In this document: one piece after another, positions 1 to 57,900 of the stretch
Position numbering within the stretch: the stretch's first letter is position 1
Layout of the letters: each line of letters starts with the position of its first letter
NCBI RefSeq assembly: GCF_000143415.4
Contig: NW_003314345.1
Coordinates: 768,637-832,636, forward strand
Reading direction: 5' to 3'
DNA from: Selaginella moellendorffii
Lineage: Eukaryota; Plantae; Lycopodiophyta
Length of the DNA stretch: 64,000 nt
Made by a program: the position numbers and the translations under genes
Notes under the pieces: generated by a model
Told to the model about the DNA's origin: nothing
Databases searched by the model: none
What the model saw: only the letters and a program-made list of their open reading frames with translations

Positions 1-1822
1 TTTCGTGTACCATTGGCGTGGCGACTGCTTGAGTCCGTAGAGAGCTTTGTTAAGCTTGCAAACGAGGTGTTCTTCTCCAGGCTGGATAAAACCAGGAGGC
101 TGAGCCACATACACCTCTTCATCGATGTCGCCGTTAAGGAACGCAGTGCAAACGTCAAGTTGATGGAGCTCGAGATCCAATTCTGCAGCTAAGATTAGTA
201 GCATACGAATGGTTGTGAGTTTCACCACCGGGCTGTAAGTCTCCGAGTAGTCCAGCCCATGAACTTGAGAAAATCCGCGTGCCACAAATCTCGCCTTGTA
301 GCGCTCAATGCTTCCATCAGCGTTGTACTTTTTCTTAAACAACCACTTGGATGAGACGAGCTTTCTGCGAGCTGGAAGTTCAACCAGCGACCAAGTGTTG
401 TTTTTCTGGAGAGAATCATACTCCTCCTGCATAGCTGCCTGCCAGTGTTCAGCTTCTGGTCCATGTAGAGCCGCTTGGGGACCGAGAGAGGCAGGTGGAG
501 CCGACAGAGCCCAGAAGTAGGCACGCTTTCCTATAGGCATCGCCTCCTTGGCTTTAAGAGATGGTTTCACGACACGACCCAAGCGTGTCACCACTGCTGT
601 GCCGGCTGGAGGAGGTGGTAGCTTGGGAATGCTGGGAGGAGTGGTGGCATCTTGATATAACTCGTCGCCAACGAACAGGTCAGCCACAAGCGTGGAAAGA
701 TCTGGCTGTTCATTGGTGCTTGAGGATGCAGCCGCTGTGGCCTGTGGAGTCGTCAGAGGAGGTGTCGAAGGAAGAGAAGTACCGTGATCAGCTCCTCCTG
801 CCAGACCGCCTCCTTCGGGCGCTCCTTCAGCAACTCCTCCTGGCTCTGCAGCGGCTGGATTGTCTGGTGCTGGGTGGAGATGTGGAACGTCGTCCAAAAT
901 CTCAGAAAGATCCACCAGAGATGGTGGAGAAACAGGAGGGAGTCTCAGGGTATCTCGATAAAGACGAGCTTCATCAAACACCACATCTCGGCTCACCACC
1001 AGTTTCCTGCGCTGGCAGTTATAGAGTCGATAGGCTTTTACCTGGGTGTGATAACCCATGAAGATGCATTTCTCGCTCTTGGGATCCAGCTTCCGCCGCT
1101 GAACATTGGGAATGTGGGCGTAGGCTATGCAACCAAACACCCTCAAGTGCCCTAACTTGGGGCGCTTCCCAGTCCATACTTGAAACGGCACCTGTCCTGT
1201 GGAACGTGTTGGCAGCCGGTTCCGGAGATACACTGCTGTGTTGAGTGCCTCTCCCCAAAACACCTTGGGCATGCCAGCGTGCTGGAGAAGGCAGCGTACA
1301 CAGTCCATAAGTGTCCTGTTCAGGCGCTCGGCGACCCCATTCTGCTGCGAGGTGTGGGCTGCGGTGTACTCGTGGTGGATGCCAGCCTGAGCAAGAAATG
1401 CCAGAAACTCCTTGCTCATATACTCACCGCCGCCATCTGAACGTAGTGTCCGGATGGTACAGCCAGTGGCATTTTCTGCCCAGCTTTTGTAGACCTGGAA
1501 GTGATGGTAGACCTCTCCCTTGTGTGCCATGCGAACAGCCACCGCATAGCGTGAGTAGTCGTCAATGAACGAAACGAAGTACCGCTTGTGACTGAGAGTT
1601 GCTTCTGGCACATGGCACACATCCGTGTGTACCAGCTGAAGAAATCCTGAGGCGCCATCTTCTGGACTTCTGCATGGAAAGGGTAGTCTTGGCTGCTTCC
1701 CCAGTTGGCACGTCTCACATACTCCCAGTTGGCTGGCACCGGTGAGGGTAAAATCATCAGCAAGCTTGTGGCTAGCAAGTAGCTGGATGTCGTGAGAATT
1801 GGCATGCCCTAGCCGAGCGTGC
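1..1822 (-). CDS. Copia pol segment (integrase plus reverse transcriptase), separated from gag by the nested insertion
   Basis: Manual translation gives HARLGH...CETCQLGK...LVHTDVC...YFVSFIDDYSR at 1821-1550 and IERYKARFVARGFSQ...ALYGLKQSPRQWYTK at about 310-1. Both ends are in the same frame; the middle was not checked codon by codon. Confidence 0.92.
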
Positions 1823-3543
1823 TGTGAGACACAAAATCCCTAGGCCCCAAAGTGGAGCCGGAAGGGCGCCACATGGTAGTGGCCAAAGCGAGAGCCAAAC
1901 GAGCGCAACACGTTTGGACCAAAAGCTCCAACTTGAAAAGTCAAGAGCGGGAGTGGAACTCCCAACGAAGTGCTCGAGGAACGAGCACAAAGCGAGCAAA
2001 AGGCAAGGCTCCAAAAAGGGACCCAAAAGGACCAACACATGACACGTGGGAGTGTCCGAGATGGAGTCCGAAGTGGAGTCCGAGGTGGACCCGAGATGGA
2101 CCCGAGTTGGAGTCCGAAGTGGAGTCCGAGATGGAGTCCGAGGTGGACCCGAGATGGACCCGAGTTGGAGTCCAAAGTGGAGTCCGAGATGGAGTCCGAG
2201 GTGGACCCGAGATGGACCCGAGCTGGAGTCCGAAGTGGAGTCTGAGATGGACCCGAGATGGAGTCCGAGATGGAGTCCGAGATGGAGTCTGAGGTGGACC
2301 CGAGATGGACCCGAAATGGAGTCCGAGATGGAGTCTGAGATGGACCCGAGATGGAGTCCAAGATGGAGTCCGAAGTCAAGACCGAGACCGGGACCGAGAC
2401 CGAGACCGAGACTGAGATCGGGACCGAGACCGAGACCGAGGCCGAGGCCGAGACCGAGCCCGAGCCCGAGTCCGAGTCCGAATCCGAGTCCGAGTCCGAG
2501 TCCGAGTCCGAGTCCGAGTCCGAGTCCGAGTCCGAGTCCGGAGCCTGAGAGGGTGAAAGCCCAAAGCGTTCGTCTCCCAGACCCTGGGGGGTTTGGTGAG
2601 CTCCAAAAGTATAGTAGGGGAAGGACTGCAGTGGAGCCAGTTTGGCCAGGAAAGGCCAGTTTGGCCCAGGAAGGCCAGACCCAGTGTTGGGTGATGAGCT
2701 GCCCACTGGGAAGTCCAAGACTAGAGTGAACACAGACCGACAAGCGGGGTGGCTTGGTGAAGTGTTCAAGAGCCAGCTCTAGTTCCCCCGGGAGATCGAC
2801 TGGCCGATGCTCCCAGTCCAAGTGTGGGTGGCACTACCTACTTGGATACCTGGTGTGGCTCAACGGAACCCGCTCTAAGCCCATGGCTAGAGCACCCAAG
2901 GGCAGAAGGCGAGGAGAGTACCCAGGTGGCTCGCGTAAGGCCACGGTGTTCCGAAATGTTGTCCCAAAGGCCTAGACTGTGGAAAGGAAGAGGAGCAGTC
3001 CTTTGGGGTAGTGACCAAGGACACAGTCGTGTGGTGAGGAAGTCCCAGAGGACTGTGGGACTTAGTGGTCGGGCCTGTGGGTCTCGATCCAGTGGTAGTG
3101 TTGGCAAACACGGCCAGGGGCAGAAAGGGACTTAGTGGGGACTGACAAAGGGATATTGGGGAAGGCTATTCCCCTTGTCGGTGGGCATCCTAAGGATGCT
3201 AAGGAGTGGATCTGAGATGACCACTCACGGATGGTTTGCCTAGTCTTGGGGAGCCAAGACTGTGATGCAAGTGGTATTGGACTACCAGTGTGGCAAAGGT
3301 GATTGGGCATGGCCTTAGCGTAACGGGCTGCTATGTCGGTGGTACCTTTGAGTGTCGGTCATGGGATCGGACACGTGGAGCACTTGGACCAAGTGCAAAT
3401 GTTGAGTGGCATGGATGCCGTTCTCGGGGCTAGCAAATCCCAAGTCCTGGATTGGACTTATGGAGGTTGTGAATGAGACTCCTCCAAGTGGTCGGAGGTG
3501 TGGTTAAGTGACTAAAGTAGAATGGAAAATTTAGTCGCTTACA
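1823..3543 (+). repeat. 5' LTR of the nested element (1721 bp)
   Basis: TGTGAGAC...CGCTTACA; near-identical to 7606-9326, with about 6 transitions seen by eye. Confidence 0.96.
2050..2545. repeat. Compound minisatellite in the LTR (GAGATGGAGTCC / GAGATGGACCC units, then GAGACC / GAGTCC hexamers); second copy at about 7833-8328
   Basis: Directly visible tandem units; they generate the spurious SD/RS/LG-repeat ORFs. Confidence 0.95.
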
Positions 3544-3546
3544 ATT

Positions 3547-3558
3547 TGGTATCGGAGC
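3547..3558 (+). promoter_or_regulatory. Primer-binding site (tRNA-iMet type) of the nested element
   Basis: TGGTATCGGAGC 3 nt after the LTR end. Confidence 0.85.
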
Positions 3559-6500
3559 TGTTCCTTAGTCCGACTTTTATTGGTGCTCAAGTATATCACC
3601 ACTAGTGTTGGCATCGGAAGGTCCGAGGAGTGGGCCTATCCTTGAGGAGTAGCAAGTCTGGAAGACATGGCTCTCCATTACAGTTCATGTGTGAACTTGT
3701 AGACGAGGTGGTGGATAGAAAAGGGCCAATAATGGAACGACTTTGGGATCTTGGGAACAGTGCAAGGTTTTCCTCATTGAGTTGAGGATGTGATCTGGAT
3801 GAGCATTTGTCTCAGCAAATTGGCTTAGGTTGTTGTGGTAAACAACTAAAGTTGGGATCACGGGAAAGATAGAGACTCCAAAACAATAAAGGAGTCACAA
3901 GATTATCCTCATATAGTTGAGGTTGGTGCTCATGAATGTGAGACCAAAGGTAATGACCGTGGAAGGTCAAATACGGAAGAGGACTCAAGTCCTTGAAATG
4001 GTAGCCGGGGCTACCTCTAATAAATGCTGGAACAACCCAAGGAGTTGGGGGTGTATTAAGTGGATGAGTTGGTATTCTCATCACATGGACAAGTAGTCCT
4101 AAGGGGCAAAGGTTGCCCCCAGAGAACAAAATCAAGTGTCGGAGTAACACTTTTGAAAATAGTCCTTTTGAGTAGGACAGGAATGCAATAAGTGTATTCC
4201 AGTGAGCTAGTGCCTCACAAGTAGGACCTTACGAGTCTGTGGATTGACCAAGTCCAAAACTGCTGGATGACTCAAGTAGAGTCAACGGATGGTCCTAAAA
4301 AGGACTGAATGAAGCATTTGGACTGAGGTGCGTTGTACCCCACAAAGGATGGGGGGGGATCATAGGATCCAAGGATGAGAACAGAGAGTATCTCATCGAT
4401 GGCAAAATGTGCCATGCTAAAGTTATAGGAAAGGTGTTCCCAGAAGAAAACAACTTTGACATGAAGTTGTGTGTGACCTCTATGGGGCAGTGCTAACAGA
4501 TGGTTGGCATGAAAAAGAGCGGTGTTGGTCTTGGCAAAGACTTAGACACGAATGGAAATGTCATAGAGGTAGGCTCGTGGAGCCGATAGTGTGGAGACAC
4601 CAAATGTGCCAAGGTGTGATACCTTGAGGCTATGTTGGTGGGTTCATGAGAACCCCTTGCCAAAGGAATCCCAATGGAAATGGGAATGGCATAGCCTAAG
4701 CTGCAGAGCATGCAGTTGGAGTGTGGTGACCCAGATAGTGATGGAGGTGTGAAAGCACCAAGTAATGAGTTGTAGGACTTGACAACTATGAGGCAACTAA
4801 GCAAGAGGTGCAAAATAACTGGTTAAATGGGTAGAAGGTAGCTACCCAAGACTTCTAGTATAGGGAAGTCGGATATACCCTTACGGGGGATAAGTTGCTT
4901 ATGTTGCGATATAGTAAGTCAATGTCATAAAAGGAAATACTCATTGTCAAGAAAGCCATCATTGGGACACCCGAACACTCTAGAACACCAGAAGGTGGTG
5001 TTTGATGTCGCGAGGGCAATGGATAAAGCCCAAGGGACTAAGTCCCTAGCGAATGATGGATAGAAGGTGCTATCCAAATGTCCAAGGTTGCGGAGACAGG
5101 AGAGGACTGTCTACCCAAGTTGGACAAAGCCAAAAATGGAATTTTGGCAAGGCTAGTGATGGGCATGTAAAGGCCCATAAGCAACAATGTAACCCCAGTG
5201 TGTGGGATTATAAGCTGAGCATACCCGGATTGAGGAACCACTCCCTGGGCTATTGGGTAGGTTCATCCCTAAGAATACTTGCTAAGGCATGATAGAAAGT
5301 GCAAAGCTATCCTCCTGGTCTGGAGGAGAATGACCGAAGGAAAGGTGTGAAGCCAAAGGCAAGTAGTGTTGGGATGGAACTAAACCATAGAAATCAAAGG
5401 GCATATCCAACAGTGGTTATGAAAGTTGGGAGTGGAGAATCAAGAGGGTGCTCAAGGATGTTGTTGCTAGCAACCGTGATGCCATGGAGAGTCTAAAATA
5501 TGGAATTGTCCATGTTAGACTATATGGCAACTATAAAGCTTGCGAAAGGGGAGGCCTTAGCAAGCTGAGGGACAGAGTTCCTTCAAGGTTCCCAAAGACG
5601 ATTCTAGGTAGCGTAGTACCTAAAAAGGCCAAGTGTAAATGGTTCATGGAACGTGCGAAATCAGAGTGGCGCAGCAGGAGCGTGGTCTTGAAGCTTGCCA
5701 TGAGGCAAGGTTATCAAGGTTAGGGAAGTAGTTCCCGAGTGTTCAAAGAGAGGGCTTTGAACGAAAGTCGATGGTCAAGGACTTTCACGCTTATGCAGGA
5801 ACCATGTTACAATGGTCGGAGGACTTGCCAAGTGAGATTGGCACGTCGGGGGAACAAAGACCCTAGTTGAAGGTGATATCTTCAAAAAGGGTGGGCCAGG
5901 GGGCCGAGCATGGAGGAGTCCATACATGATCACAGACATGTCAAGTGAGAGGACTTGGCAGTGTGGAGGAACTAGGTTCCTAAGCTGTGATCTGTAGCGC
6001 GCTTTAAAAATAGGTTGGTGCACCGGCGTGGGGAGTCACGCCAGGCATCTAGCGTGATGCCGTCCGTAGATGCATATACGGAGGTTGGGTTCGAGTCCCG
6101 ACCCTCTAGTGCTTGGGTTCGAGTCCCAAATCACTAGGGCGTGGTGATGGTTTGGAATATGAGGACACTCATATTTCGGTGGTCATGGACTCTCAGTGGG
6201 GAGACTGGTTTGGGCACACCGCCAAGCGAGGGATGCCTCGGAGTCGTGATGCACGGTTAGATTGCTTAGTGTGAAAGCTCGGCATATCTAACTTGAACGC
6301 TTTGGTGCAAGTGGCACCAAGGTCGTGGTGAGTGAGATGGGGACACCTAATCTCAGTTGCTATGAACCCTTGGCCGTAAGGGCTAGCTTGGGTGCACCAC
6401 CAAGTGTGGGGGATGCCCCCGGGGTTATAGTCAACAACTTGGAGGTCTAGAAGACCAAGTACCTCTTGGCAACTCTGTTAAGGTGCCAAGGTGAGATCAC

Positions 6501-7605
6501 TAGGTGATCTTATGGCCAGATAAGGACAAGGTCCTTGGTTTGCTAAGGAATGAAGTTCCTGGTTCAAAATGTTGAAATTGAACTGTTTAAGATGGTGTGG
6601 CTTGGTCGTGATGACCAAGTGGGAAGAGCACCTAAGGGAAATAAACTATGTCCGTCCGATGGCATAGTGAGTCCGAGGAAAGTAGTCTCTATAAAAGACC
6701 CATGGGAGGGTCACGAAGTTGGGCCATGGATAGAGCCCATAGCAGAATATGCTAAAGAGACATACTAGGGGTGAACATCCTCCGGACTTGGCAAAGAAGA
6801 GTCTTTGCTATGGAACCGAATGGATACCTCAAAAATGGAGGTAGCGATCCGATGTTGCTGGGTGCAACAATCAAGGATAGGAGCAAAGGACTAGTGGCCA
6901 AAGTTTGGGCCATGGAATTTAATGGAAGGGATCCAAATGGCAAAGTTAGCCAAGGAACACTAATGTGTTCGATGCTAACAGCTTGTGGGAAAGGAAGCGG
7001 ACTTTCAAGGATGGATTCCTAAGTGCTCCAATTTGGCGAAGTAAAGGCTCCAAGTGAGGGAGCGGTAAGGTAGCCAAATGATAGGGCCATGGACAGCCCT
7101 AGCACAAAGTATGATAAATGGAACTTAGTGCCCAAGGTGGCACGAAATAGAAGAGAGGATGATGGTGCCCTCAAGTAATGAACTTCCTAGGATAGGGAAG
7201 TGGAGTTGCACAATCTGTGCAATGCAAGGTGTTGGAGACACCTAGAAAATTGACTTCCAAAAAGTCAAAAGAGTAAAAGTTCCAAGGTGCAAACATTCAA
7301 TAGATGGAAATTGAGACTATTCGAGAAGGAGTAGTGGGATTGACTTAGAGAAGGGTCTCTAAGAGGTTTAGCGAGAACTAAACCAATAAAAGGGGAGAAC
7401 CATTACATGTGGTCCAATCAGTCTTTAAGTTGGAGAGACTACGCTCCTTAAAGGATGGACAAGGCATGGTGAGCCTTTGATGTCAAACCATAGACAAAGA
7501 TTGGCTAGGTGCCAAGGATGGAAATGGTAACACGTGTGGGTGTTACTTTATGAAAGGGTTTACCGTTCGATGAGGACATCGAACTTCGTCTATGGGTGGT
7601 GGAGT

Positions 7606-9326
7606 TGTGAGACACAAAATCCCTAGGCCCCAAAGTGGAGCCGGAAGGGCGCCACATGGTAGTGGCCAAAGCGAGAGCCAAACAAGCGCAACACGTTTGG
7701 ACCAAAAGCTCCAACTTGAAAAGTCAAGAGCGGGAGTGGAACTCCCAACGAAGTGCTCGAGGAACGAGCACAAAGCGAGCAAAAGGCAAGGCTCCAAAAA
7801 GGGACCCAAAAGGACCAACACATGACACGTGGGAGTGTCCGAGATGGAGTCCGAAGTGGAGTCCGAGGTGGACCCGAGATGGACCCGAGTTGGAGTCCGA
7901 AGTGGAGTCCGAGATGGAGTCCGAGGTGGACCCGAGATGGACCCGAGTTGGAGTCCAAAGTGGAGTCCGAGATGGAGTCCGAGGTGGACCCGAGATGGAC
8001 CCGAGCTGGAGTCCGAAGTGGAGTCTGAGATGGACCCGAGATGGAGTCCGAGATGGAGTCCGAGATGGAGTCTGAGGTGGACCCGAGATGGACCCGAAAT
8101 GGAGTCCGAGATGGAGTCCGAGATGGACCCGAGATGGAGTCCAAGATGGAGTCCGAAGTCAAGACCGAGACCGGGACCGAGACCGAGACCGAGACTGAGA
8201 TCGGGACCGAGACCGAGACCGAGGCCGAGGCCGAGACCGAGCCCGAGCCCGAGTCCGAGTCCGAATCCGAGTCCGAGTCCGAGTCCGAGTCCGAGTCCGA
8301 GTCCGAGTCCGAGTCCGAGTTCGGAGCCTGAGAGGGTGAAAGCCCAAAGCGTTCGTCTCCCAGACCCTGGGGGGTTTGGTGAGCTCCAAAAGTATAGTAG
8401 GGGAAGGACTGCAGTGGAGCCAGTTTGGCCAGGAAAGGCCAGTTTGGCCCAGGAAGGCCAGACCCAGTGTTGGGTGATGAGCTGCCCACTGGGAAGTCCA
8501 AGACTAGAGTGAACACAGACCGACAAGCGGGGTGGCTTGGTGAAGTGTTCAAGAGCCAGCTCTAGTTCCCCCGGGAGATCGACTGGCCGATGCTCCCAGT
8601 CCAAGTGTGGGTGGCACTACCTACTTGGATACCTGGTGTGGCTCAACGGAACCCGCTCTAAGCCCATGGCTAGAGCACCCAAGGGCAGAAGGCGAGGAGA
8701 GTACCCAGGTGGCTCGCGTAAGGCCACGGTGTTCCGAAATGTTGTCCCAAAGGCCTAGACTGTGGAAAGGAAGAGGAGCAGTCCTTTGGGGTAGTGACCA
8801 AGGACACAGTCGTGTGGTGAGGAAGTCCCAGAGGACTGTGGGACTTAGTGGTCGGGCCTGTGGGTCTCGATCCAGTGGTAGTGTTGGCAAACACGGCCAG
8901 GGGCAGAAAGGGACTTAGTGGGGACTGACAAAGGGATATTGGGGAAGGCTATTCCCCTTGTCGGTGGGCATCCTAAGGATGCTAAGGAGTGGATCTGAGA
9001 TGACCACTCACGGATGGTTTGCCTAGTCTTGGGGAGCCAAGACTGTGATGCAAGTGGTATTGGACTACCAGTGTGGCAAAGGTGATTGGGCATGGCCTTA
9101 GCGTAACGGGCTGCTATGTCAGTGGTACCTTTGAGTGTCGGTCATGGGATCGGACACGTGGAGCACTTGGACCAAGTGTAAATGTTGAGTGGCATGGATG
9201 CCGTTCTCGGGGCTAGCAAGTCCCAAGTCCTGGATTGGACTTATGGAGGTTGTGAATGAGACTCCTCCAAGTGGTCGGAGGTGTGGTTAAGTGACTAAAG
9301 TAGAATGGAAAATTTAGTCGCTTACA
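7606..9326 (+). repeat. 3' LTR of the nested element (1721 bp)
   Basis: Direct repeat of 1823-3543, followed by TSD CGTGC. Confidence 0.96.
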
Positions 9327-10680
9327 CGTGCCAGAGCTGGAGAGAGTTGGCAGCCCAGGAGCTGGGGCGAATTGCAAGCAAATGCCCCTGCTCGTGAGTT
9401 GAGAGGATCAACTGAGCATTGAGCTTGTAGAGAGTCTCAGCTCGTCTACCAAAAGCTACTGGATGGCCAGTCTCGTCAAAGATGGTGCATCCGTCTGCAT
9501 TGAAGAGTGTTGAGAAGCCTTGATCTGCTGCTACACCGACTGAGAACACTGTCTGTCCTGCTTCTGGTACGTAGTAGACCTGGTTCACGAGCTTCTCAGC
9601 TCCACTCTCCAACTTTATGATGACCGTTCCTTGTCCTTCCACTGTTAAGGGGCGTTTGTCTCCTACAAAGACTTGCTTTTCTTGCTCCAGTGGCCGGTAC
9701 TTGTGAAAAGCTCTCTTCAATGGTGTGAGGTGCATCGAGGCTCCAGAATCCATCCAGAGCACTTCGGCTTCGGACACAGTGGATGAAGATGCAGCGAGCG
9801 TCATCATCAACATCGTGTCAGGTTGGCGTGAAGAAGAGCTTCTTTCAGCGTGAGCTTTCTCTGCGGCTTTCTTGATCCGGCATTCACGCTCCACGTGGCC
9901 AGCTTTGCCGCAGTAGTTACATGGGCCCTTGCGTTTTTTATTGGTTGCAAATCCAGGGCTGGGAGAAGGGCTCTTTTGTCCTCGAACAGGGCCATCTCGT
10001 TTCTTCCCACCCGATTGCTTTCCCATGATCAAGGCCTGCTCCACCCGAGCAGCCTGAGAGGGCGCCTTTTGTCTCCGCTCGTTCTGCTTTCGTTCTTCCT
10101 CGATCAGGTCCGAGTAGAGCGAGTCCAAGTCCTTTCCAGGTACAGCCGAGAGCATCGATGCGAAAGGTTGGAGATCAGGGGAGACAGAGCTCAGAAGGAA
10201 TGCCTTAGCTTGGTCAAAGGTGATTGCCGCTTCCGCGTCCTTCAGCTCGCTGATCATCGCTTTAAACTTTCCAATGTAAGTGGCCATGGTGTCATCAGGT
10301 TGCATTCTCATCGTGAAGAACCTTTGTGTTAGCACCACCTTAGCATTGGCAGCTTTGGCAGCGAAGATTTGTGTAAGGGATGTCCAGTTCTGGTGGGCTG
10401 TTTTGGTAAGATCAAGGAGATGAACGAATTCATCCCCAAGACCTAACCCGATGACAGAGAGCGCTTTTCGATTCTTGGAGTCCCAGTCGAGCCGTTGGGT
10501 TACATCCGCAGCAGCCGGACGTTGAGTCGTTCCATCCACTATAGGCCAGCAGTCCTTGGCCAAAAGGATAAGCTGTACTTTTGTTTTCCAAGTGGAGAAA
10601 TTCTGTCCCGTGAACTTTTGGAGAAGTTTCTCCCAGCCCCCAGAGTCCCAAGAATTTCCTGCTGCGTTAGCAGAAGACAT
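9327..10680 (-). CDS. Copia gag-protease portion of the polyprotein
   Basis: 452-aa ORF with F-x-G-x-N-F-x-x-W gag N-terminus, CCHC knuckle and DSGA protease motif. It ends LQLWH at the insertion point and continues in frame as ARLGH at 1818 once the insert is removed. Confidence 0.95.
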
Positions 10681-26439: not shown

Positions 26440-27462
26440 TCAAATCACCGATGAACTTGGTCACCTGCGGGAGCAAGCAAAAAATAGGATTAGAAACACT
26501 CCCTCGAGCTACCAAGTTGAGGACGCTACGATGGGCACAGCGGCCTGGAGGCGGCTCAGTATATCTACGACCATCTCTGGCAAAACTTGCAAAGTGTGTG
26601 CTCGATTCTTTTGCTGTATGGTAGTCTCTAACTCTTCTTCTTCCAGGACTTGCTTCGCAGGAGGGTGACTTCACGAGCGATGTTTTGCGAAGAGTGATCT
26701 TGTCAACCGAGGATGGTTTCGAGAGATACGTCGCTGGCTCCTGGGCATTAAGACCACAGATCGCGACGGTTGGATCGTGCTGCCTCGTCGGGTTGATACG
26801 AGGGAACCAACTGTTCGTCGCCAACTTGGGCGATTCGAGGGCGGTCATGGGAACTTTCCTGGGACGGGATAACAGGATCACAGCGATTCAGCTCTCTGCT
26901 GAGCACAATGCCAGCATAGATGCCGTGCGTCAGGAGCTCAAGGACTTACATCCAGACGACTCACACATTGTCGTTCTCAGGCATGGAGTCTGGCGTGTCA
27001 AAGGGATAATCCAGGTACAGTCTCGATCTGGGTGTGATCCTCGAGTATGGAGTTCGCCTGTACTACAGCTATGGAGAAGTCGCCAAATGCGTGCTTCCCA
27101 ATGTCGTGGAGCCAGAAGAGAGCATCGTTGCGACTGGGAGCTGTGGCGCCGATATGGACATACTCTCCAGCATCCTACTACCATCTTCGACAGTCGTGCC
27201 AGCATCCCTCATTTCATCACAAAAATTCCACGCGTTCCACAAACCTGTGCATTCTTCCTCATCTTTATCCCTCCATCGATCAGCCAACCTCGTTTCGCAT
27301 GGCGCCCTGGAAACCATGGAGACAGCAGTCCGCCAGATTGCTCAGCATATCAATTGCGAGTCATGCAAATGGCAAGAAATGCCCCAATCAACGGATTGGA
27401 GAGCGGAGGACCAGAAATGGAGCTGGGTAGCCGCTTGCTGCAGCTGGAATTCGAGGAAGAAG
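26440..27462. pseudogene. Rearranged partial duplicate of the PP2C gene with an internal inversion of about 0.5 kb
   Basis: 26443-26524 matches 32722-32801 directly; 26522-27016 is the reverse complement of about 32803-33295; 27020-27462 matches 33322-33776 directly. Introns are retained. Confidence 0.9.
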
Positions 27463-27849
27463 CCCATCAACTCTCACACCATGCATATAAATTAAATGCC
27501 AAGATCCAATCTCTCTTAAAAAAACTTACATTTAGATAATTTTGAATAAAGTTTGTTGTCTTTCAAAAATTGCAAAACATTTTATATATGCATCTTATGT
27601 GTAGAGTTAAACATTACAATATCATTAAAATAGTCAATCACAAACTTCCCTAAATAACCTAGTGCAAGTTATGCAGCAACCCCTACACATGCACTAAGCC
27701 ACTCTAATCCTGGCACTCAGCAAGACTCATCCTCCTTGCTAGCCTCTTCTTTGCTAGCGTCCATTGTCCCACCTTCAAAGGCAAAAACTAAAGAGGCTCA
27801 CAACCTTTGATATTATACTGTGATGATATTTGAGCATATACCGCTTGTT

Positions 27850-32178: not shown

Positions 32179-33518
32179 TTACACTCCAGTAGCTCCATTA
32201 GCTCTTGCTGCCACCGCGCTCTCGCCCCCGGCTCTTATGGACAAGGGGCTCATACTCCTCGAGCCTCCAGAGATCACCATCTCCCTGTCAAGAAACACCA
32301 CCGCCACAGTTATATCGTCGTGGAAATGCCGCCTCACGCCGCGCTCGATGCGTATCAAGTCCAAGTATCTCATCTCTCGTTTCCTGGCCGCCTCTTGCAA
32401 CGCAGCCTTGATCAGTCGCCTCGCGATCCCCTGGAAAACAAACCGTTCAGTCCAGCTATAGTTTGAGTCGCACCAAAAAACGAGCAAAGAGAAGGAAAGC
32501 TTACTGCTCGAGGATGGCTGTATACAATGTCTACGGCTTCCTGGCTGGACAAGTGCTCCCACAGCCCGTCCGACGCGAATATCAAAAACTGGTCCGCTGG
32601 TCTGAGGGTGAAGACACTGATCGATGGTTCCGCAGTCAGCACAGGCCTCTCTAGTGGCTGTGGAAGGCGAAACCGAGCGATAAGTGGCTCCCTGTTAAAT
32701 TCCGCTTTCTTTAGGTACACATCACCGATGGACTTGGTCACCTGCGGGATCAAGCAAAAAATAGGATTAGAAACACTCTCTCGAGCTACCAAGTTGAGGA
32801 CTTACCTGGATTATCCCTTTGACACGCCAGACTCCATGCCTGAGAACGACAATGTGTGAGTCGTCTGGATGTAAGTCCTTGAGCTCCTGACGCACGGCAT
32901 CTATGCTGGCATTGTGCTCAGCAGAGAGCTGAATCGCTGTGATCCTGTTATCCCGTCCCAGGAAAGTTCCCATGACCGCCCTCGAATCGCCCAAGTTGGC
33001 GACGAACAGTTGGTTCCCTCGTATCAACCCGACGAGGCAGCACGATCCAACCGTCGCGATCTGTGGTCTTAATGCCCAGGAGCCAGCGACGTATCTCTCG
33101 AAACCATCCTCGGTTGACAAGATCGCTCTTCGCAAAACATCGCTCGTGAAGTCACCCTCCTGCGAAGCAAGCCCTGGAAGAAGAGGAGTAAGAGACTACC
33201 ATACAGCAAAAGAATCGAGCACACACTTTGCAAGTTTTGCCAGAGATGGTTGTTGATATACTGAGCCGCCTCCGGGCCGCCGTGTCCATCGTAGACGCCA
33301 ACGAAAGTTTTGCCAGGCCCGGTCTCGATCTGGGTGTGATCCTCGAGTATGGAGTTCGCCTGTACTACAGCTATGGAGAAGTCGCCAAATGCGTGCTTCC
33401 CAATGTCGTGGAACCAGAGGAGAGCATCGTTGCGACTGGGAACCGTGGCGCCGATATGGACATACTGCTCAACGCGTTTCCAGCATCCTACTACCATCTT
33501 CGACAGTCGTGCCAGCAT
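32179..33518 (-). CDS. Protein phosphatase 2C, clade D; 4 exons
   Basis: [68 protein letters not shown]. Confidence 0.95.
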
Positions 33519-34243
33519 CCCTCATTTCATCACAAAAATTCCACGCGTCCCACAAACCTGTGCATTCTTCCTCGTCTTTATCCCTCCATCGATCAGCCAA
33601 CTTCGTTTAGCACGGCGCCCTGGAAACCATGGAGGCAGCAGTCCGCCGGATTGCTCAGCATATCAATCGCGAGTCGCGCGAATGGCAAGAAATGCCCCGA
33701 TCGGCGGATCGGAGAGCGGAGGACCGGAAATGGAGCTGGGTAGCCGCTTGCCGCAGCTAGAATTCGAGGAAGAAGCCACCCTAAGAGAAACCCTAGGAGA
33801 GGAGGGGCACCCAACGAGGCGAAAATTCCACTGGCGATCCACACAGAATGGAGGAACCACCGAGGACGCCCCGAGCTGCTGGAGGCCAAGAAGAAGAAAC
33901 GAATGGATTCCCCTCTCCTCCACTCCACTGTTCCTCGCGAGCGCCTTCACAGGGCAAAATGAGAAGACCTAAAAACCCACACATACGCGCTTATATCTTT
34001 AAAAGTCGCCATTGGCGAGCCACGTAAGCTAATGGAATCTCTCGGCATATCTTCCCATGAGTTCGAGAATCTTTTCATCTGGCACTAAACTAGAACGATT
34101 CCGAGCATATGCTGCCTGACGTGGAAAGTATTTAGGGCGTGCTGACTTGGCAAGGGATATTCGTTTGCGAGAAGCCCTAGAACATCAAGGGTTTCGGGAT
34201 CCTTGCGGCTTGGGCGCGTAGGTTCTAGGATTGCGATCTAGGA

Positions 34244-35798: not shown

Positions 35799-37853
35799 TC
35801 AAAACTTGTGTTCTATGATGTTTGCCAGAGCTACGTAAGGCCCGGCGTTGCAATTCTCGTCGTTGATCGCCGATCGAGCAGCATGGGCTGCGAAGTCCGA
35901 GCGGCTGTGACGCCTACAAGCCCCCAGCAAATTCGCCCAGTCGTGGAAATCCGGCTCGAAAGGCATATGGGCGATGAGATCTCTCATGTCGCGAACGTAT
36001 CCCGCTCGCCCAAGCATGTCGATCAAGCAGCCGTAGTGCTGCTTTGTTCTCGAGACCTGGTGATCGCCCAGCATCGAAACGAAGAAGTTGGAAGCCACTT
36101 TGACGTCGCCCGAGTGGCTCGAGCCGAGCAAAACGCAAGTGAAAGAGATTTGCTCCGGCTGGACGCCCTCCAGTTTCATGGCCTGGAAGTAGTTTAGCAC
36201 ATCGCTTGGATCCGCATTGTGAGCAAACACTCCGAGCATACAGTTCCACGAGACAAGATCTCGCTCGGGCATTCTAGTGAAGAAGTCTTGCGCGAGTTTG
36301 TAATGCCCGCACTGGGCATACACTGCAAGCATAGCGTTCCACGAGATTAAGTCGTGATCGGGCATTTGATCAAACGTTTCTTTTGCTTTAGAGATTTTTC
36401 TGTGTTGGCCATAGCCGGCTAGCAACGCGTTCCACGATCCGATCGCTCTTTCGGGCATAGAGTTAAAGATCTTCTCAGCATCTTCTATATGCCCGGCTTG
36501 GGTATATGCTGCTAGCATCGCGTTTCTTGAGATTACGTTCTTCTCTTGTATGGAATCAAAAAAGCATCTTGCATTTTCGAGTTGCCCCTTGTTTGCGTAA
36601 GCTGTGATCATCGCTGTGGCGGCTACGATGTCCGTATGGGGCATCTCACCGAAGATCTTTCTGGCATCTTCCAAGCGTCCCAGCTGCGAGCACACCGCTA
36701 CCATTGTACTCCAAGAAATAAGATTCCTTCCGGGCATGGAATTAAAGAGTTCTCTCGCGTTTTCGAATCGACCGTTCTCAGCATATGCAACCAGCATTGC
36801 ATTCCAGGAAATGACGTCACGATTGGGCATGGAATCAAAGACGAGCTTGGCTTCACGAAGATGCCCATTCTGCGAATATGCCGTGAGCATCGCGTTCCAC
36901 GAGGCAGTGCTCCTGTCGGGCATGAGATCGAACAAGCGCCTTGCCTCGTGGATATTCCCTTCCTGGGCATATGCGGACAGCATCGCGGTCCAGGAGACGA
37001 GATTCCTATCCGGCATGCCGTCGAAGATTCTCCTTGCGATCTGGAGATGCCCAGCCTGAGAATATGCCGTCAGGAGCGTCGTCCACGAGACCAGGTTTCG
37101 CTCCGGCATTCGATCAAACAACGCTTGTGCCTCTTCCAGATGCCCGGTTTGGGTATATGCTGCAAGCATGGCGTTCCAGGAGATCAGATTCCGGTATCTT
37201 ATTCCCGCAAACGCATATTCTGCACCACAGAGATTCCCTCCTTGGGCATATGCTCCCAGCATCGCGTTCCACGAGACGGCATCCCACTCAGGCATCGAGC
37301 GGAGAATCGCTTCCGCAGGTTTCAAATGCAGGTTATTCGCATATGCTGTGAGCATCAAGTTCCACGACACCATATCCATCTCGGGCATCGCATCGAAAAC
37401 TCGTCTTGCTTGGATCAAGCTCCCGCTGCTGATCGTTGCAGTGAGAATCGCATTCCATGACACCACATCCCTGTCCGGCATTCGATCGAAGATTTGCTTC
37501 GCTCGATCAAGATCTCCGACACGAACATACGCCGCCAGTATCGAGTTCCAAGACACCACATCTCGATCGGGCATGGCATCAAACACCGCAGATGCCCACC
37601 GCAGATGCCCGTTCTGGGCATATGCTGCGATCAGGAGATTCCAGGTATATACATCCCGGGCTTCCATGGAATCAAACACCGCCCTTGCGAGCTCCACGCT
37701 GCCACACCGTCCGTACATCTGTATGAGAAGATTCGAGAGATATACTCCCTGGCTGGTGGTGGAATCGATCCACGGGCTGGCTGCGTCGTGGAGATTGAGC
37801 GCGTCAGCGAAGCTTTGACAGCGCTTGATACAGTCGCCCAGATTCGCGGGCAT
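35799..37853 (-). CDS. PLS-class pentatricopeptide repeat protein with E domain and no DYW
   Basis: 684-aa intronless ORF with about 16 31-aa repeats (RxxVSWNAMLxAYxQxG...FDxMP), then HYGCLIDMLGRAG, MPFEPD and LLGACRRH. Confidence 0.95.
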   Translation of the reverse strand: MPANLGDCIKRCQSFADALNLHDAASPWIDSTTSQGVYLSNLLIQMYGRCGSVELARAVFDSMEARDVYTWNLLIAAYAQNGHLRWASAVFDAMPDRDVVSWNSILAAYVRVGDLDRAKQIFDRMPDRDVVSWNAILTATISSGSLIQARRVFDAMPEMDMVSWNLMLTAYANNLHLKPAEAILRSMPEWDAVSWNAMLGAYAQGGNLCGAEYAFAGIRYRNLISWNAMLAAYTQTGHLEEAQALFDRMPERNLVSWTTLLTAYSQAGHLQIARRIFDGMPDRNLVSWTAMLSAYAQEGNIHEARRLFDLMPDRSTASWNAMLTAYSQNGHLREAKLVFDSMPNRDVISWNAMLVAYAENGRFENARELFNSMPGRNLISWSTMVAVCSQLGRLEDARKIFGEMPHTDIVAATAMITAYANKGQLENARCFFDSIQEKNVISRNAMLAAYTQAGHIEDAEKIFNSMPERAIGSWNALLAGYGQHRKISKAKETFDQMPDHDLISWNAMLAVYAQCGHYKLAQDFFTRMPERDLVSWNCMLGVFAHNADPSDVLNYFQAMKLEGVQPEQISFTCVLLGSSHSGDVKVASNFFVSMLGDHQVSRTKQHYGCLIDMLGRAGYVRDMRDLIAHMPFEPDFHDWANLLGACRRHSRSDFAAHAARSAINDENCNAGPYVALANIIEHKF

Positions 37854-56800: not shown

Positions 56801-57900
56801 GCTCCTTGCTGCGGGTTTCATCTTCCCAGTTGAGCATTTTGACTAGATTTCCAACATTGATCCAGTCTGTAAGAAGAATGGGAAATTCCACATCTAAGTC
56901 AACTTTTGGAGCCTCAATGACTTAACACTCAAGGATCGTTTCCTGACAACCAGCTCCAGCTTCATCCTCATGATCAAGAAAAGACATATTTCCACACGCC
57001 ATGGGGTCTCTTCACATACAAGGTACTTCCATTTGGTTTGTGTAATGTAGGAGCTACTTTTCACAGCTTTGTCACATATGCTTTTCATGACCTCCTCGAC
57101 TCCTCTCTTCAAGTTTACATGGAAGATCTTTGCTCAGCATCTCACTCTTTTGGAGATCATCTAGTTGGCTCACGTAAGGCCACGATGTTCCGAATGTTGC
57201 CCCAAAGTCCCAGGCTGTGAAAAGGAAGAGGAGCCGTCCTCTAGGGTAGTACCTCTATTATTAATTTTGTATTCTCATGTATCAAAGACATTTCAAATGT
57301 TCAAATTGCAGCAAATAGATGAGTGAGTTTTCCAGCATTGCCACTTATATCGATTTCACTCAACCCTGGCAAGTGCAAGTTTGGAGTCACACAAGGGAGG
57401 CTGCTCGGTTTTGACATCTCGGCTTCACTCCCCATGCAGAGAAGTGCATAGAGATTCTTCAGAGTCCACCTCTGACATCACCTAAGATGCTCCAACGCTT
57501 CCTCAGCCAAGCTGGTTGCTTTTGACGCTTTATACTAGAGTTTGCTGCAATCATCTGTCCTTCTCAGCATCTCCTCAAGAAGGACACGCCTTTCCAGTGG
57601 ACTGGCAAACAACAACAAGCTTTCGAGGTGATCCAGTCCCTTCTTTGACAACTACTTATTCTCCAACCACCAATTCTTGGAGATCCCTTCAAGATTTTCA
57701 TCACCATTGGAGCTGAAGCTTTTGGAGCATGTTTTTTGTCAACGAAAGGAGCCAGAGGACCCACTACATGCTGTCTAATTTGTCTCACATTCATTCAAGG
57801 TTTCAGAGCAGCAATACCTCAAGCTCAAGAAGGAAGCTGTGGTAGTAGTCTGCACATTATGATGTTTCTGCCACCTTTTATTTGGAGCCCATATCCACGT
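53900..57900 (+). mobile_element. Decayed Ty3/Gypsy element of the Tat lineage (gag, protease, archaeal-type RNase H, RT remnants)
   Basis: gag-like AFIQSLKP; protease LLDSGS; aRH FFDGAF...NEAEYLAVI...NFWADKLS at 56100-56450; RT DIFAWDY...HKIEL, YMEDL, LNPGKCKFG; many stops and frameshifts. Confidence 0.82.

What the first reader, a model, noticed from the sequence alone, without database searches (positions are those of the whole stretch)
1823..9326. Non-coding retroelement built as a continuous array of short RNA hairpins
Seen: the 4-kb internal domain has no recognisable coding remnant but is tiled by back-to-back local inverted repeats (5-8 bp stems, 3-10 nt mostly purine-rich loops), roughly one per 20-40 nt by eye. 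Examples: GGGGCAA-agg-TTGCCCC 4103-4119; GATGAGA-10-TCTCATC 4374-4397; ACAACTT-7-AAGTTGT 4450-4470; TGGATAG-6-CTATCCA 5057-5076; GCCAAAA-6-TTTTGGC 5129-5148; GTTCAAAG-6-CTTTGAAC 5741-5762; CTTGGTC-5-GACCAAG 6601-6619; CTTAGAGA-4-TCTCTAAG 7344-7363, followed 1 nt later by GGTTTAG-6-CTAAACC 7365-7384; GTAACAC-6-GTGTTAC 7527-7546; GTTCGATG-4-CATCGAAC 7565-7584. Stem sequences mostly differ, so this is not a simple tandem repeat. The LTRs show the same pattern outside the minisatellite (GTGCTCG-5-CGAGCAC 1970-1988). The imperfect stems examined read as G-U wobbles on the sense strand (GGAATGCA/TGTATTCC, GCTAAC/GTTGGC, CTATGTC/GGCATAG). Known: LARDs are non-coding LTR elements reported to have structured internal domains. 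Inference: a parasitic RNA whose information is mainly structural. Possible roles are repeated Gag packaging signals, RNA compaction, or keeping duplexes below Dicer-substrate length. Near-identical LTRs and a clean TSD show it moved recently.
Basis: partly seen in the sequence, partly recalled or inferred. Interest (0 to 1): 0.9.

Follow-up and report, generated by a model that had tools for sequence, protein, structure and literature searches.

The report
Hairpin-packed protein-less spikemoss retrotransposon
A recently inserted, protein-less jumping gene of the spikemoss Selaginella moellendorffii really is packed with about 100 short perfect hairpins, far more than chance gives, but the sequence cannot show whether its RNA needs them or they are a copying by-product.

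Summary
Window 1823-9326 is a complete non-autonomous LTR retrotransposon of S. moellendorffii (scaffold GL377649.1). It has 1,721-bp LTRs 99.65% identical, a tRNA-iMet-type PBS, a PPT, and a 5-bp TSD (CGTGC) confirmed by an uninterrupted paralogous site. It sits in a Copia gag-pol.

The 4,059-bp interior has no coding remnant. It carries 101 perfect hairpins of 5 bp or more against 24 in dinucleotide shuffles, 53 against 6 at 6 bp, and 20 against 1.5 at 7 bp. The rest of the window and 185 kb of other genome loci show nothing similar.

The G-U wobble claim fails. Both strands gain equal excess stability, G.U is no commoner than A.C at mismatches, and predicted G.U pairs are depleted.

The only signs pointing to the sense strand are purine-rich, C-poor loops (7% C) and one duplicated junction module. 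That module has 10 compensatory pairs and conserved G.U pairs.

Where the family majority differs from this copy, hairpins were lost 10 times and never gained, at the neutral rate. Single hairpins are therefore dispensable.

My best reading is a redundant, selected RNA scaffold for parasitic packaging (0.4). A template-switch by-product remains a live rival (0.28).

The scan has already found this family and related ones elsewhere in this genome.

The parts
1818..1822 (+). 5' copy of the target-site duplication, CGTGC
   Evidence: The paralogous Copia fragment L002:14962-15040 reads GAG-CGTGC-CAGAGCT without interruption.
1823..3543 (+). 5' LTR, 1,721 bp, TG...CA. It has a hairpin cluster at 1868-1988, a minisatellite at about 2040-2540, and a hairpin-rich part at 2576-3498.
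   Evidence: It differs from the 3' LTR at 6 positions, 99.65% identity. Hairpins are listed, enrichment is, and the minisatellite is.
3549..3560 (+). Primer-binding site TGGTATCGGAGC, tRNA-iMet type
   Evidence: Read directly from the sequence. The match to plant tRNA-iMet rests on established knowledge, with one G.U position.
3547..7605 (+). Non-coding internal domain of 4,059 bp, carrying about 92-101 short perfect hairpins
   Evidence: Enrichment and anatomy are. The longest stop-to-stop reading frame is 138 codons, there is no Pfam match, and there is no tblastn match.
6140..6254 (+). Module A: a hairpin with a GACA loop followed by a four-way junction
   Evidence: On its own it folds better on the + strand (z -2.5 against -1.3).
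6318..6435 (+). Module B, an old duplicate of module A
   Evidence: Ten pairs are changed on both sides and still paired, against 0-2 in slid controls and 1 of 500 shuffles. The + strand gives z -2.9 against -1.5.
5660..5686 (+). Sense copy resembling the 5' half of tRNA-iMet
   Evidence: Read directly from the sequence. The family-majority letter at 5678 is closer to the tRNA. The tRNA sequence is recalled from memory.
6083..6129 (+). Two tRNA T-arm/B-box-like hairpins (GGTTCGAGTCC)
   Evidence: ARAGORN and Rfam do not call them as tRNA.
7592..7605 (+). Polypurine tract, GGGTGGTGGAG then T
   Evidence: Read directly from the sequence.
7606..9326 (+). 3' LTR
9327..9331 (+). 3' copy of the target-site duplication, CGTGC
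9322..10680 (-). Host Copia gag / Pol beta-barrel ORF that the insertion interrupts
   Evidence: Pfam Retrotran_gag_2 at 6.4e-27 and Pol_BBD at 1.1e-19.

Best explanation
This is a LARD-type non-autonomous LTR retrotransposon. Its genomic RNA is transcribed from the LTR on the + strand. That RNA has evolved into a 'beads-on-a-string' chain of about 100 short hairpins (5-8 bp) with unrelated stems, separated by purine-rich, C-poor loops and linkers.

The element makes no protein. It must therefore be packaged, reverse-transcribed from a tRNA-iMet primer and integrated by the Gag, RT and IN of an autonomous partner.

I infer that the hairpin chain is a redundant cis-acting property of the RNA. 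Many small helices presenting unpaired G/A would give multivalent, low-specificity binding sites for Gag/nucleocapsid. They would also keep the RNA compact and free of long-range or long-duplex pairing, which would help it compete for the partner's particles.

The duplicated GACA-hairpin/four-way-junction module is a more specific signal within the chain.

Shown: the anatomy, the enrichment, the local-pair dominance, the covariation in the module, and the dispensability of single hairpins. Inferred: selection on the bulk array and any role in packaging.
For: - Enrichment of 4- to 13-fold, confined to the element.
- Exact 4-bp stems are not enriched (83 against 73.8). Stems of 5, 6, 7 and 8 bp are (48/17.8, 33/4.5, 16/1.2, 4/0.3), and none reaches 9 bp. 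Longer stems are AT-richer (rho -0.22, p 0.03). Together this gives a bounded size and stability window.
- Loops hold 7% C and 71% purine on the sense strand, and 86 of 92 loops contain G.
- The global fold keeps 75 of 101 hairpins. Only 3% of pairs span more than 500 nt, against 25% in a shuffle.
- The old internal duplicate keeps its structure through 10 double changes and conserved G.U pairs, and favours the + strand.
- The family-majority letter restores or lengthens a perfect stem at 11 of 34 sites, so the source sequence was even richer in hairpins.
- In this lineage there were 10 losses and 0 gains, which argues against an ongoing mutational generator.
- The few RNA-seq reads lie mostly first-mate-on-minus, which would mean + sense RNA if the library is of the usual stranded kind.
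- LARDs are reported to specify conserved RNA structures (PMC7215508, citing Kalendar 2004).
Against: - Excess stability is the same or larger on the minus strand (mean z -1.88 on + against -2.53 on -).
- There is no G.U preference.
- Imperfect stems are only 2- to 3-fold enriched, so complementarity is almost purely Watson-Crick. That is unusual for old selected RNA helices.
- Copy-specific changes hit stems at the neutral rate, 10 observed against 9.1 +/- 2.5 expected. They made more A.C (6) than G.U (3).
- There is no shared loop motif and no GNRA or UNCG tetraloops.
- Expression in two RNA-seq runs is very low: 10 and 21 reads per 9.2 million records.
- No partner element and no Gag binding were examined.
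Confidence: 0.4

Rival explanations
1. Mutational by-product. Short perfect inverted repeats were written into an unconstrained non-coding body by template-switch (fold-back) copying, most plausibly during reverse transcription. They are tolerated rather than needed.
For: - Stems are almost purely Watson-Crick, with no G.U excess, and both strands are equally stabilised.
- Stems are all different and share no loop motif.
- Hairpins are lost at the neutral rate in this copy's lineage.
- Template switching is documented to create perfect stems and multi-base 'compensatory' changes in one event (PMC8794818).
Against: - No gain of a stem of 5 bp or more accompanies the 10 losses in this lineage, and no clustered multi-base differences appear in the listed variants.
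- There are no long stems of 9 bp or more, although template switches are not length-limited.
- Loops are C-poor and purine-rich on one strand only.
- The process would have to be specific to this element's replication, because 56 kb of the window and 185 kb of other loci lack the pattern.
- The junction module has long-range compensatory pairs and G.U pairs.
Confidence: 0.28
2. Shield against RNA silencing or decay. Dense local structure with short, purine-only single-stranded gaps limits RISC and RDR access. Stems of 8 bp or less stay far below Dicer substrate length.
For: - Stems are capped at 8 bp, and the longest inverted repeat anywhere is 11 bp, which equals chance.
- The median linker is 17 nt, and local pairs dominate.
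- The family is very abundant (145,583 contig pieces laid in one DNA run), so it is a likely siRNA target.
Against: - No small-RNA data were examined.
- Only about 51% of bases are predicted paired, so many 21-nt windows remain partly open.
- The same strand-symmetry problems apply as for the packaging model.
Confidence: 0.14
3. Degenerate tandem array of one ancestral hairpin unit.
For: - A few internal paralogous pairs exist: 6127/6307, 3727/3847, and around 5467-5647.
- Hairpins 3771-3788 and 3907-3922 share a stem.
Against: - The pyrimidine track shows no periodicity in its autocorrelation.
- BLAST self-comparison finds only the self hit.
- Mean self-similarity is barely above shuffles, 13.9 against 12.1.
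- Stems are unrelated to one another.
Confidence: 0.05
4. Ordinary decayed gag-pol.
For: None was found.
Against: - There are 45-92 stops per frame, and the longest stop-to-stop reading frame is 138 codons.
- Ten ORFs have no Pfam family.
- tblastn with 41 proteins finds nothing significant.
- The family majority is more hairpin-perfect, not more coding-like.
Confidence: 0.02

Closest known systems
LARDs (large retrotransposon derivatives, e.g. Sukkula of barley; Kalendar et al. 2004, as cited in PMC7215508)
   Same: LTR element with PBS, PPT and TSD. It has a several-kb internal domain without gag or pol, depends on a partner in trans, is abundant, and is said to specify conserved RNA secondary structure.
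   Different: No sequence relation was tested or is expected, since this is a lycophyte and Sukkula is from grasses. The LTRs are 1.7 kb, not about 4.4 kb. Dense tiling with about 100 short perfect hairpins is not described for LARDs in the papers I could search.
Dispersed packaging signals of ssRNA viruses and HBV (PS-mediated assembly; PMC6281560, PMC7612645, PMC5431903)
   Same: Many stem-loops spread over the whole RNA, with variable stems and purine-rich loops. Individually they are weak and redundant.
   Different: Those signals share a loop recognition motif, for example RGAG in HBV. Here no shared motif is found. No capsid or Gag binding is known for this element.
Template-switch mutations that create and maintain hairpins (Monttinen and Loytynoja 2022, PMC8794818)
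   Same: They produce perfect reverse-complement stems and apparent multi-base compensatory change without G.U intermediates.
   Different: They are described as rare events in DNA replication of RNA genes, not as a process that fills a 4-kb retroelement. No such event was caught in this copy's lineage.
Small-RNA-derived TRIMs (Cassandra, Helenus-1_SMo; PMC10886601)
   Same: Non-autonomous LTR elements, one of them in the same species, that carry tRNA or 5S fragments. This element holds tRNA-like pieces at 5660-5686 and 6083-6129.
   Different: In those elements the small-RNA part lies in tiny LTRs and acts as a Pol III promoter. Here the pieces lie inside a 4-kb body and are not recognised as tRNA.

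Membership tests
LTR retrotransposon | Two direct LTRs ending TG...CA, flanked by a 4-6 bp target-site duplication | tested here: met
   The LTRs are 1,721 bp and 99.65% identical. The TSD is CGTGC, and an empty paralogous site exists.
LTR retrotransposon | PBS next to the 5' LTR and a polypurine tract next to the 3' LTR | tested here: met
   TGGTATCGGAGC lies 5 nt after the 5' LTR, and GGGTGGTGGAG lies just before the 3' LTR.
LARD (non-autonomous, large) | No gag/pol coding capacity | tested here: met
LARD (non-autonomous, large) | Total length above about 4 kb, with a long internal domain | tested here: met
   The element is 7,504 bp, with a 4,059-bp interior.
LARD (non-autonomous, large) | Internal domain and its RNA structure conserved across family members | tested here: inconclusive
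   Only read-level family data and one internal duplicate were available. No aligned copies could be fetched.
LARD (non-autonomous, large) | Mobilised by an identified autonomous partner that shares LTR or PBS features | not testable with these tools
   No partner lies in the window, and this genome's TE proteins are absent from the protein collections.
Dispersed packaging signals | Many stem-loops dispersed over the RNA | tested here: met
Dispersed packaging signals | Shared loop recognition motif | tested here: not met
   No loop k-mer stands out (best 3-mers 1.7- to 2.1-fold). The only common trait is at least one G, in 86 of 92 loops.
Dispersed packaging signals | Binding by the capsid or Gag protein | not testable with these tools
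   This needs biochemistry.
Selected structured RNA (generic) | Strand-specific stability and G.U tolerance | tested here: not met
   Not met for the bulk array. Met only for modules A and B.
Selected structured RNA (generic) | Compensatory base changes | tested here: inconclusive
   Ten double changes appear in the module A/B pair. None could be tested for the bulk hairpins.
Template-switch-generated hairpins | Clustered multi-base changes that copy the neighbouring complement | tested here: inconclusive
   None appear among the 40 listed differences, but 418 rows were hidden and there is no phylogeny.

The most novel reading that the evidence does not exclude
This would be a retroelement whose heritable 'information' is a bulk physical property of its RNA: the density of generic short hairpins with exposed purines. 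Selection among thousands of competing copies would maintain that property, and no single hairpin would be required. Such an RNA would act as a multivalent Gag-binding and compaction scaffold, and perhaps as a silencing shield. It would be a new design principle for parasitic non-coding RNAs, found in several S. moellendorffii families.
Probability: 0.3. Interest if true: 0.8.

Novelty: new variant of a known kind. Interest (0 to 1): 0.6.

Why it matters
How protein-less LTR retrotransposons out-compete their autonomous partners is poorly understood. It is also unclear what selection acts on in their long non-coding bodies. This family gives an unusually clean, quantifiable candidate trait: about 100 independent hairpins in thousands of copies.

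With the copies aligned, it becomes a natural experiment. It could separate selection on RNA structure from hairpin creation by template switching, which is an open issue in RNA evolution.

If the array proves to be only a by-product, it would still be a striking footprint of reverse-transcriptase template switching.

Tried and rejected
Attempts to fetch other copies for covariation all failed:
- The spurious internal ORF 3812-4150(-) has no relatives.
- The flanking Copia gag has no Selaginella relatives in the protein collection.
- The LTR ORF 1772-2821(-) hit only low-complexity proteins among 1.84 billion representatives.
- Eight S. moellendorffii loci fetched through PPR genes (L001-L008, about 185 kb) hold no copy.

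Other tests that led nowhere:
- A covariance model of modules A and B finds no further copy in the window.
- Rfam shows no family in the element apart from sub-threshold noise in the minisatellite.
- The old relative LTR at 61.5-63.3 kb is too decayed by C>T and G>A changes to test conservation.
- No periodicity was found.
- No special tetraloops were found.

Readings rejected: decayed gag-pol, and a simple degenerate tandem repeat.

The Kalendar 2004 paper is not held, so it is cited only through PMC7215508.

Full report
**What is there**

Window 1823-9326 is one complete LTR retrotransposon on the + strand.
- The two LTRs (1823-3543 and 7606-9326) are 1,721 bp long and differ at 6 positions, 99.65% identity.
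- They begin TG and end CA and are flanked by CGTGC on both sides.
- A paralogous fragment of the same Copia family, fetched by chance, reads GAG-CGTGC-CAGAGCT without interruption (L002:14962-15040). This proves the 5-bp duplication and the element's limits.
- TGGTATCGGAGC follows the 5' LTR and is a tRNA-iMet-type primer-binding site. GGGTGGTGGAG precedes the 3' LTR.
- The insertion sits in a Copia gag / Pol beta-barrel ORF on the minus strand.
- An exact look-up of an intronless PPR gene places the window at the last 64 kb of scaffold GL377649.1 of Selaginella moellendorffii GCA_000143415.2. This confirms the species named in earlier notes of this scan.

**No coding capacity**

- The 4,059-bp interior has 45-92 stops per frame, and its longest stop-to-stop reading frame is 138 codons.
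- Its ten longest ORFs match no Pfam family.
- Forty-one proteins, from the window's long open frames and one Copia gag relative, find nothing in it by tblastn.
- Rfam finds no family.

By structure and size it is a LARD-type non-autonomous element.

**The hairpins are real**

Perfect stems with loops of 3-10 nt, counted against 200 dinucleotide shuffles:

| Stem length | Observed | Shuffled |
|---|---|---|
| 5 bp or more | 101 | 24.3 |
| 6 bp or more | 53 | 6.1 |
| 7 bp or more | 20 | 1.5 |
| 8 bp or more | 4 | 0.4 |

- No shuffle reached the observed value.
- The flanking Copia sequence is at chance.
- Along the window, stems of 6 bp or more run at 10-14 per kb in the element's body and about 2.8 per kb elsewhere.
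- 185 kb of other S. moellendorffii loci show only (AT)n artefacts.
- The LTRs are enriched too outside the minisatellite: 6 against 0.8 at 1823-2040, and 22 against 7.1 at 2560-3546.

Excess by exact stem length:

| Exact stem length | Observed | Shuffled |
|---|---|---|
| 4 bp | 83 | 73.8 |
| 5 bp | 48 | 17.8 |
| 6 bp | 33 | 4.5 |
| 7 bp | 16 | 1.2 |
| 8 bp | 4 | 0.3 |
| 9 bp or more | 0 | about 0.1 |

- Longer stems are AT-richer (rho -0.22, p 0.03).

Folding agrees with the counts.
- 120-nt windows have a mean z of -1.9 on the + strand and -2.5 on the - strand. The Copia control gives -0.4.
- The whole domain folds at -1527.6 kcal/mol, against -1254.9 for one shuffle.
- That fold keeps 75 of the 101 hairpins.
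- 61% of its pairs span 30 nt or less (39% in the shuffle), and 3% span more than 500 nt (25% in the shuffle).

'Continuous array' is somewhat overstated. The 92 non-overlapping perfect hairpins cover 39% of the domain, and about half of the bases are predicted paired.

**It is not a disguised repeat**

- There is no periodicity.
- BLAST finds only the self hit.
- Sensitive self-alignment shows just three paralogous pairs.

**Which strand, and RNA or DNA?**

- Excess stability is the same or larger on the minus strand.
- Stems with one internal mismatch are only 2- to 3-fold enriched. They give G.U 7, A.C 5 and other 18, against 2.4, 2.3 and 9.9 in shuffles.
- At the ends of the perfect stems, G.U against A.C is 24:11 outside and 13:7 inside. 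This fits the 0.60:0.40 ratio expected from composition.
- G.U makes up 10.4% of predicted pairs, against 16.6% in shuffles.
- The complementarity is therefore almost purely Watson-Crick and is symmetric between strands.

Two features do point to the sense strand.
- Loop composition: A 0.34, C 0.07, G 0.37, T 0.22. Loops are 71% purine and linkers 61%.
- The region 6000-6440: z is about -7 to -8.

Region 6000-6440 holds an old duplication.
- Module A is 6140-6254 and module B is 6318-6435. Each has a hairpin with a GACA loop followed by a four-way junction.
- Of module A's 58 predicted pairs, 95% of cells stay paired in module B.
- Ten pairs are changed on both sides, against 0-2 in slid controls and 1 of 500 shuffles. 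Four of these lie in the long-range helix that closes the junction. Several G.U pairs are conserved.
- Each module on its own folds better on the + strand: z -2.5 and -2.9, against -1.3 and -1.5.
- G.U is 17% of pairs in this region and 9.5% elsewhere.

There seem to be two layers: one RNA-like conserved module, and a bulk of simple perfect hairpins.

**Family data**

- One DNA run holds the family in huge numbers: 145,583 contig pieces at 85% identity or more.
- Two RNA-seq runs gave only 10 and 21 reads per 9.2 million records. Most lay first-mate-on-minus, which would mean + sense RNA if the library is of the usual stranded kind.
- One run guessed to be RNA has contigs identical to this copy.
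- At 34 listed interior sites nearly all family contigs differ from this copy.

I evaluated these sites one at a time and built no consensus.
- The family letter lengthens or creates a perfect stem at 11 sites. Examples: 5193 goes from 4 to 8 bp, 5623 from 6 to 9 bp, and 7425 from 0 to 7 bp.
- It shortens only three 4-bp stems.
- It has no effect at 20 sites.

The source sequence was therefore richer still in hairpins, and this copy's lineage lost 10 stems of 5 bp or more and gained none.
- Random substitutions with the same spectrum would break 9.1 +/- 2.5 stems.
- The mismatches created are A.C 6, G.U 3 and other 2.
- In the LTR part, only 1 of 5 such differences is discordant between the two LTRs. 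Most of them therefore predate the last insertion.
- The element transposed while carrying broken hairpins, so single hairpins are dispensable. No purifying selection per hairpin is visible on this short branch.
- The absence of gains argues against a currently active hairpin-writing mutation process.

Two caveats apply. The table showed only 40 of 458 variable places, and contigs are not phased.

**Interpretation**

- The safest statement is that the element is a LARD-type retrotransposon whose RNA is predicted to be a chain of local hairpins. This trait was ancestral to the family's expansion.
- I rank first (0.4) a redundant, selected RNA scaffold that helps the parasite's RNA be bound, compacted and packaged by a partner's Gag. 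It resembles the dispersed packaging signals of ssRNA viruses and HBV (PMC6281560, PMC7612645), but without their shared loop motif.
- The main rival (0.28) is that the hairpins are footprints of template switching. That process is known to write perfect stems and multi-base 'compensatory' changes in one event (PMC8794818). It fits the Watson-Crick purity and the strand symmetry.
- It does not explain the C-poor loops, the 5-8 bp size window, the lack of gains, or the restriction to this element.
- A silencing or decay shield (0.14) is compatible with the 8-bp cap and the local-only pairing, but it is untested.
- A degenerate tandem repeat (0.05) and a decayed gag-pol (0.02) are essentially excluded.

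**Novelty and standing**

- Full-text searches found no description of hairpin-tiled LTR elements.
- This scan has, however, already reported the same phenomenon on other DNA of this genome. The notes are s1-337345, s1-374824, s1-402665, s1-398746 and s1-392230, with the same unresolved question. This is therefore a further copy, not a first sighting.
- New here: the negative strand and G.U tests, the contrast between the junction module and the bulk hairpins, the empty-site proof, and the 'losses only, at the neutral rate' result.
- The decisive analysis could not be run, because no tool gave access to other copies. It is covariation and branch-specific rates across aligned genomic copies.

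Noticed in passing
window 5660-5686 (+): A sense copy of about 27 nt resembles the 5' half of plant tRNA-iMet, the element's own primer. It lies 2.1 kb downstream of the PBS. The family-majority letter at 5678 is closer to the tRNA. The tRNA sequence is recalled from memory, and the origin of the copy is unexplained.
   Followed up: partly
window 6083-6103 and 6113-6129 (+): Two adjacent hairpins carry the tRNA T-arm/B-box motif GGTTCGAGTCC. ARAGORN and Rfam do not call them as tRNA.
   Followed up: partly
window 2040-2540 and 7823-8323: A minisatellite inside each LTR has 12-nt and 58-nt periods. It creates long spurious ORFs on both strands (227-353 aa) that match only low-complexity proteins.
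   Followed up: yes
window 61495-about 63250 (-): An old relative of this LTR, about 65% identical and 70% AT, ends in TACA with no PBS after it. It is decayed mainly by C>T and G>A changes and no longer shows hairpin enrichment. A further 100-bp LTR-like piece lies at 57152-57250 (+).
   Followed up: partly
L002:14962-15040: A fragment of the same Copia family holds the uninterrupted target sequence GAG-CGTGC-CAGAGCT, which serves as an empty-site control for this insertion.
   Followed up: yes
window 35799-37853 (-): An intronless 684-aa PPR gene is annotated in GCA_000143415.2. Its exact match located the window at the end of scaffold GL377649.1.
   Followed up: yes
window 26526-27464 and 32799-33777: A pair of repeats 92-98% identical, partly inverted, lies next to ORFs of 187-284 aa. 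I did not examine them.
   Followed up: no
window 6989-7006: The family majority reads GGAAG-tgga-CTTCC here. This copy's change at 7005 shifts the register to GAAAG-gaagcgga-CTTTC, so a 5-bp stem survives by slipping within a purine repeat.
   Followed up: yes
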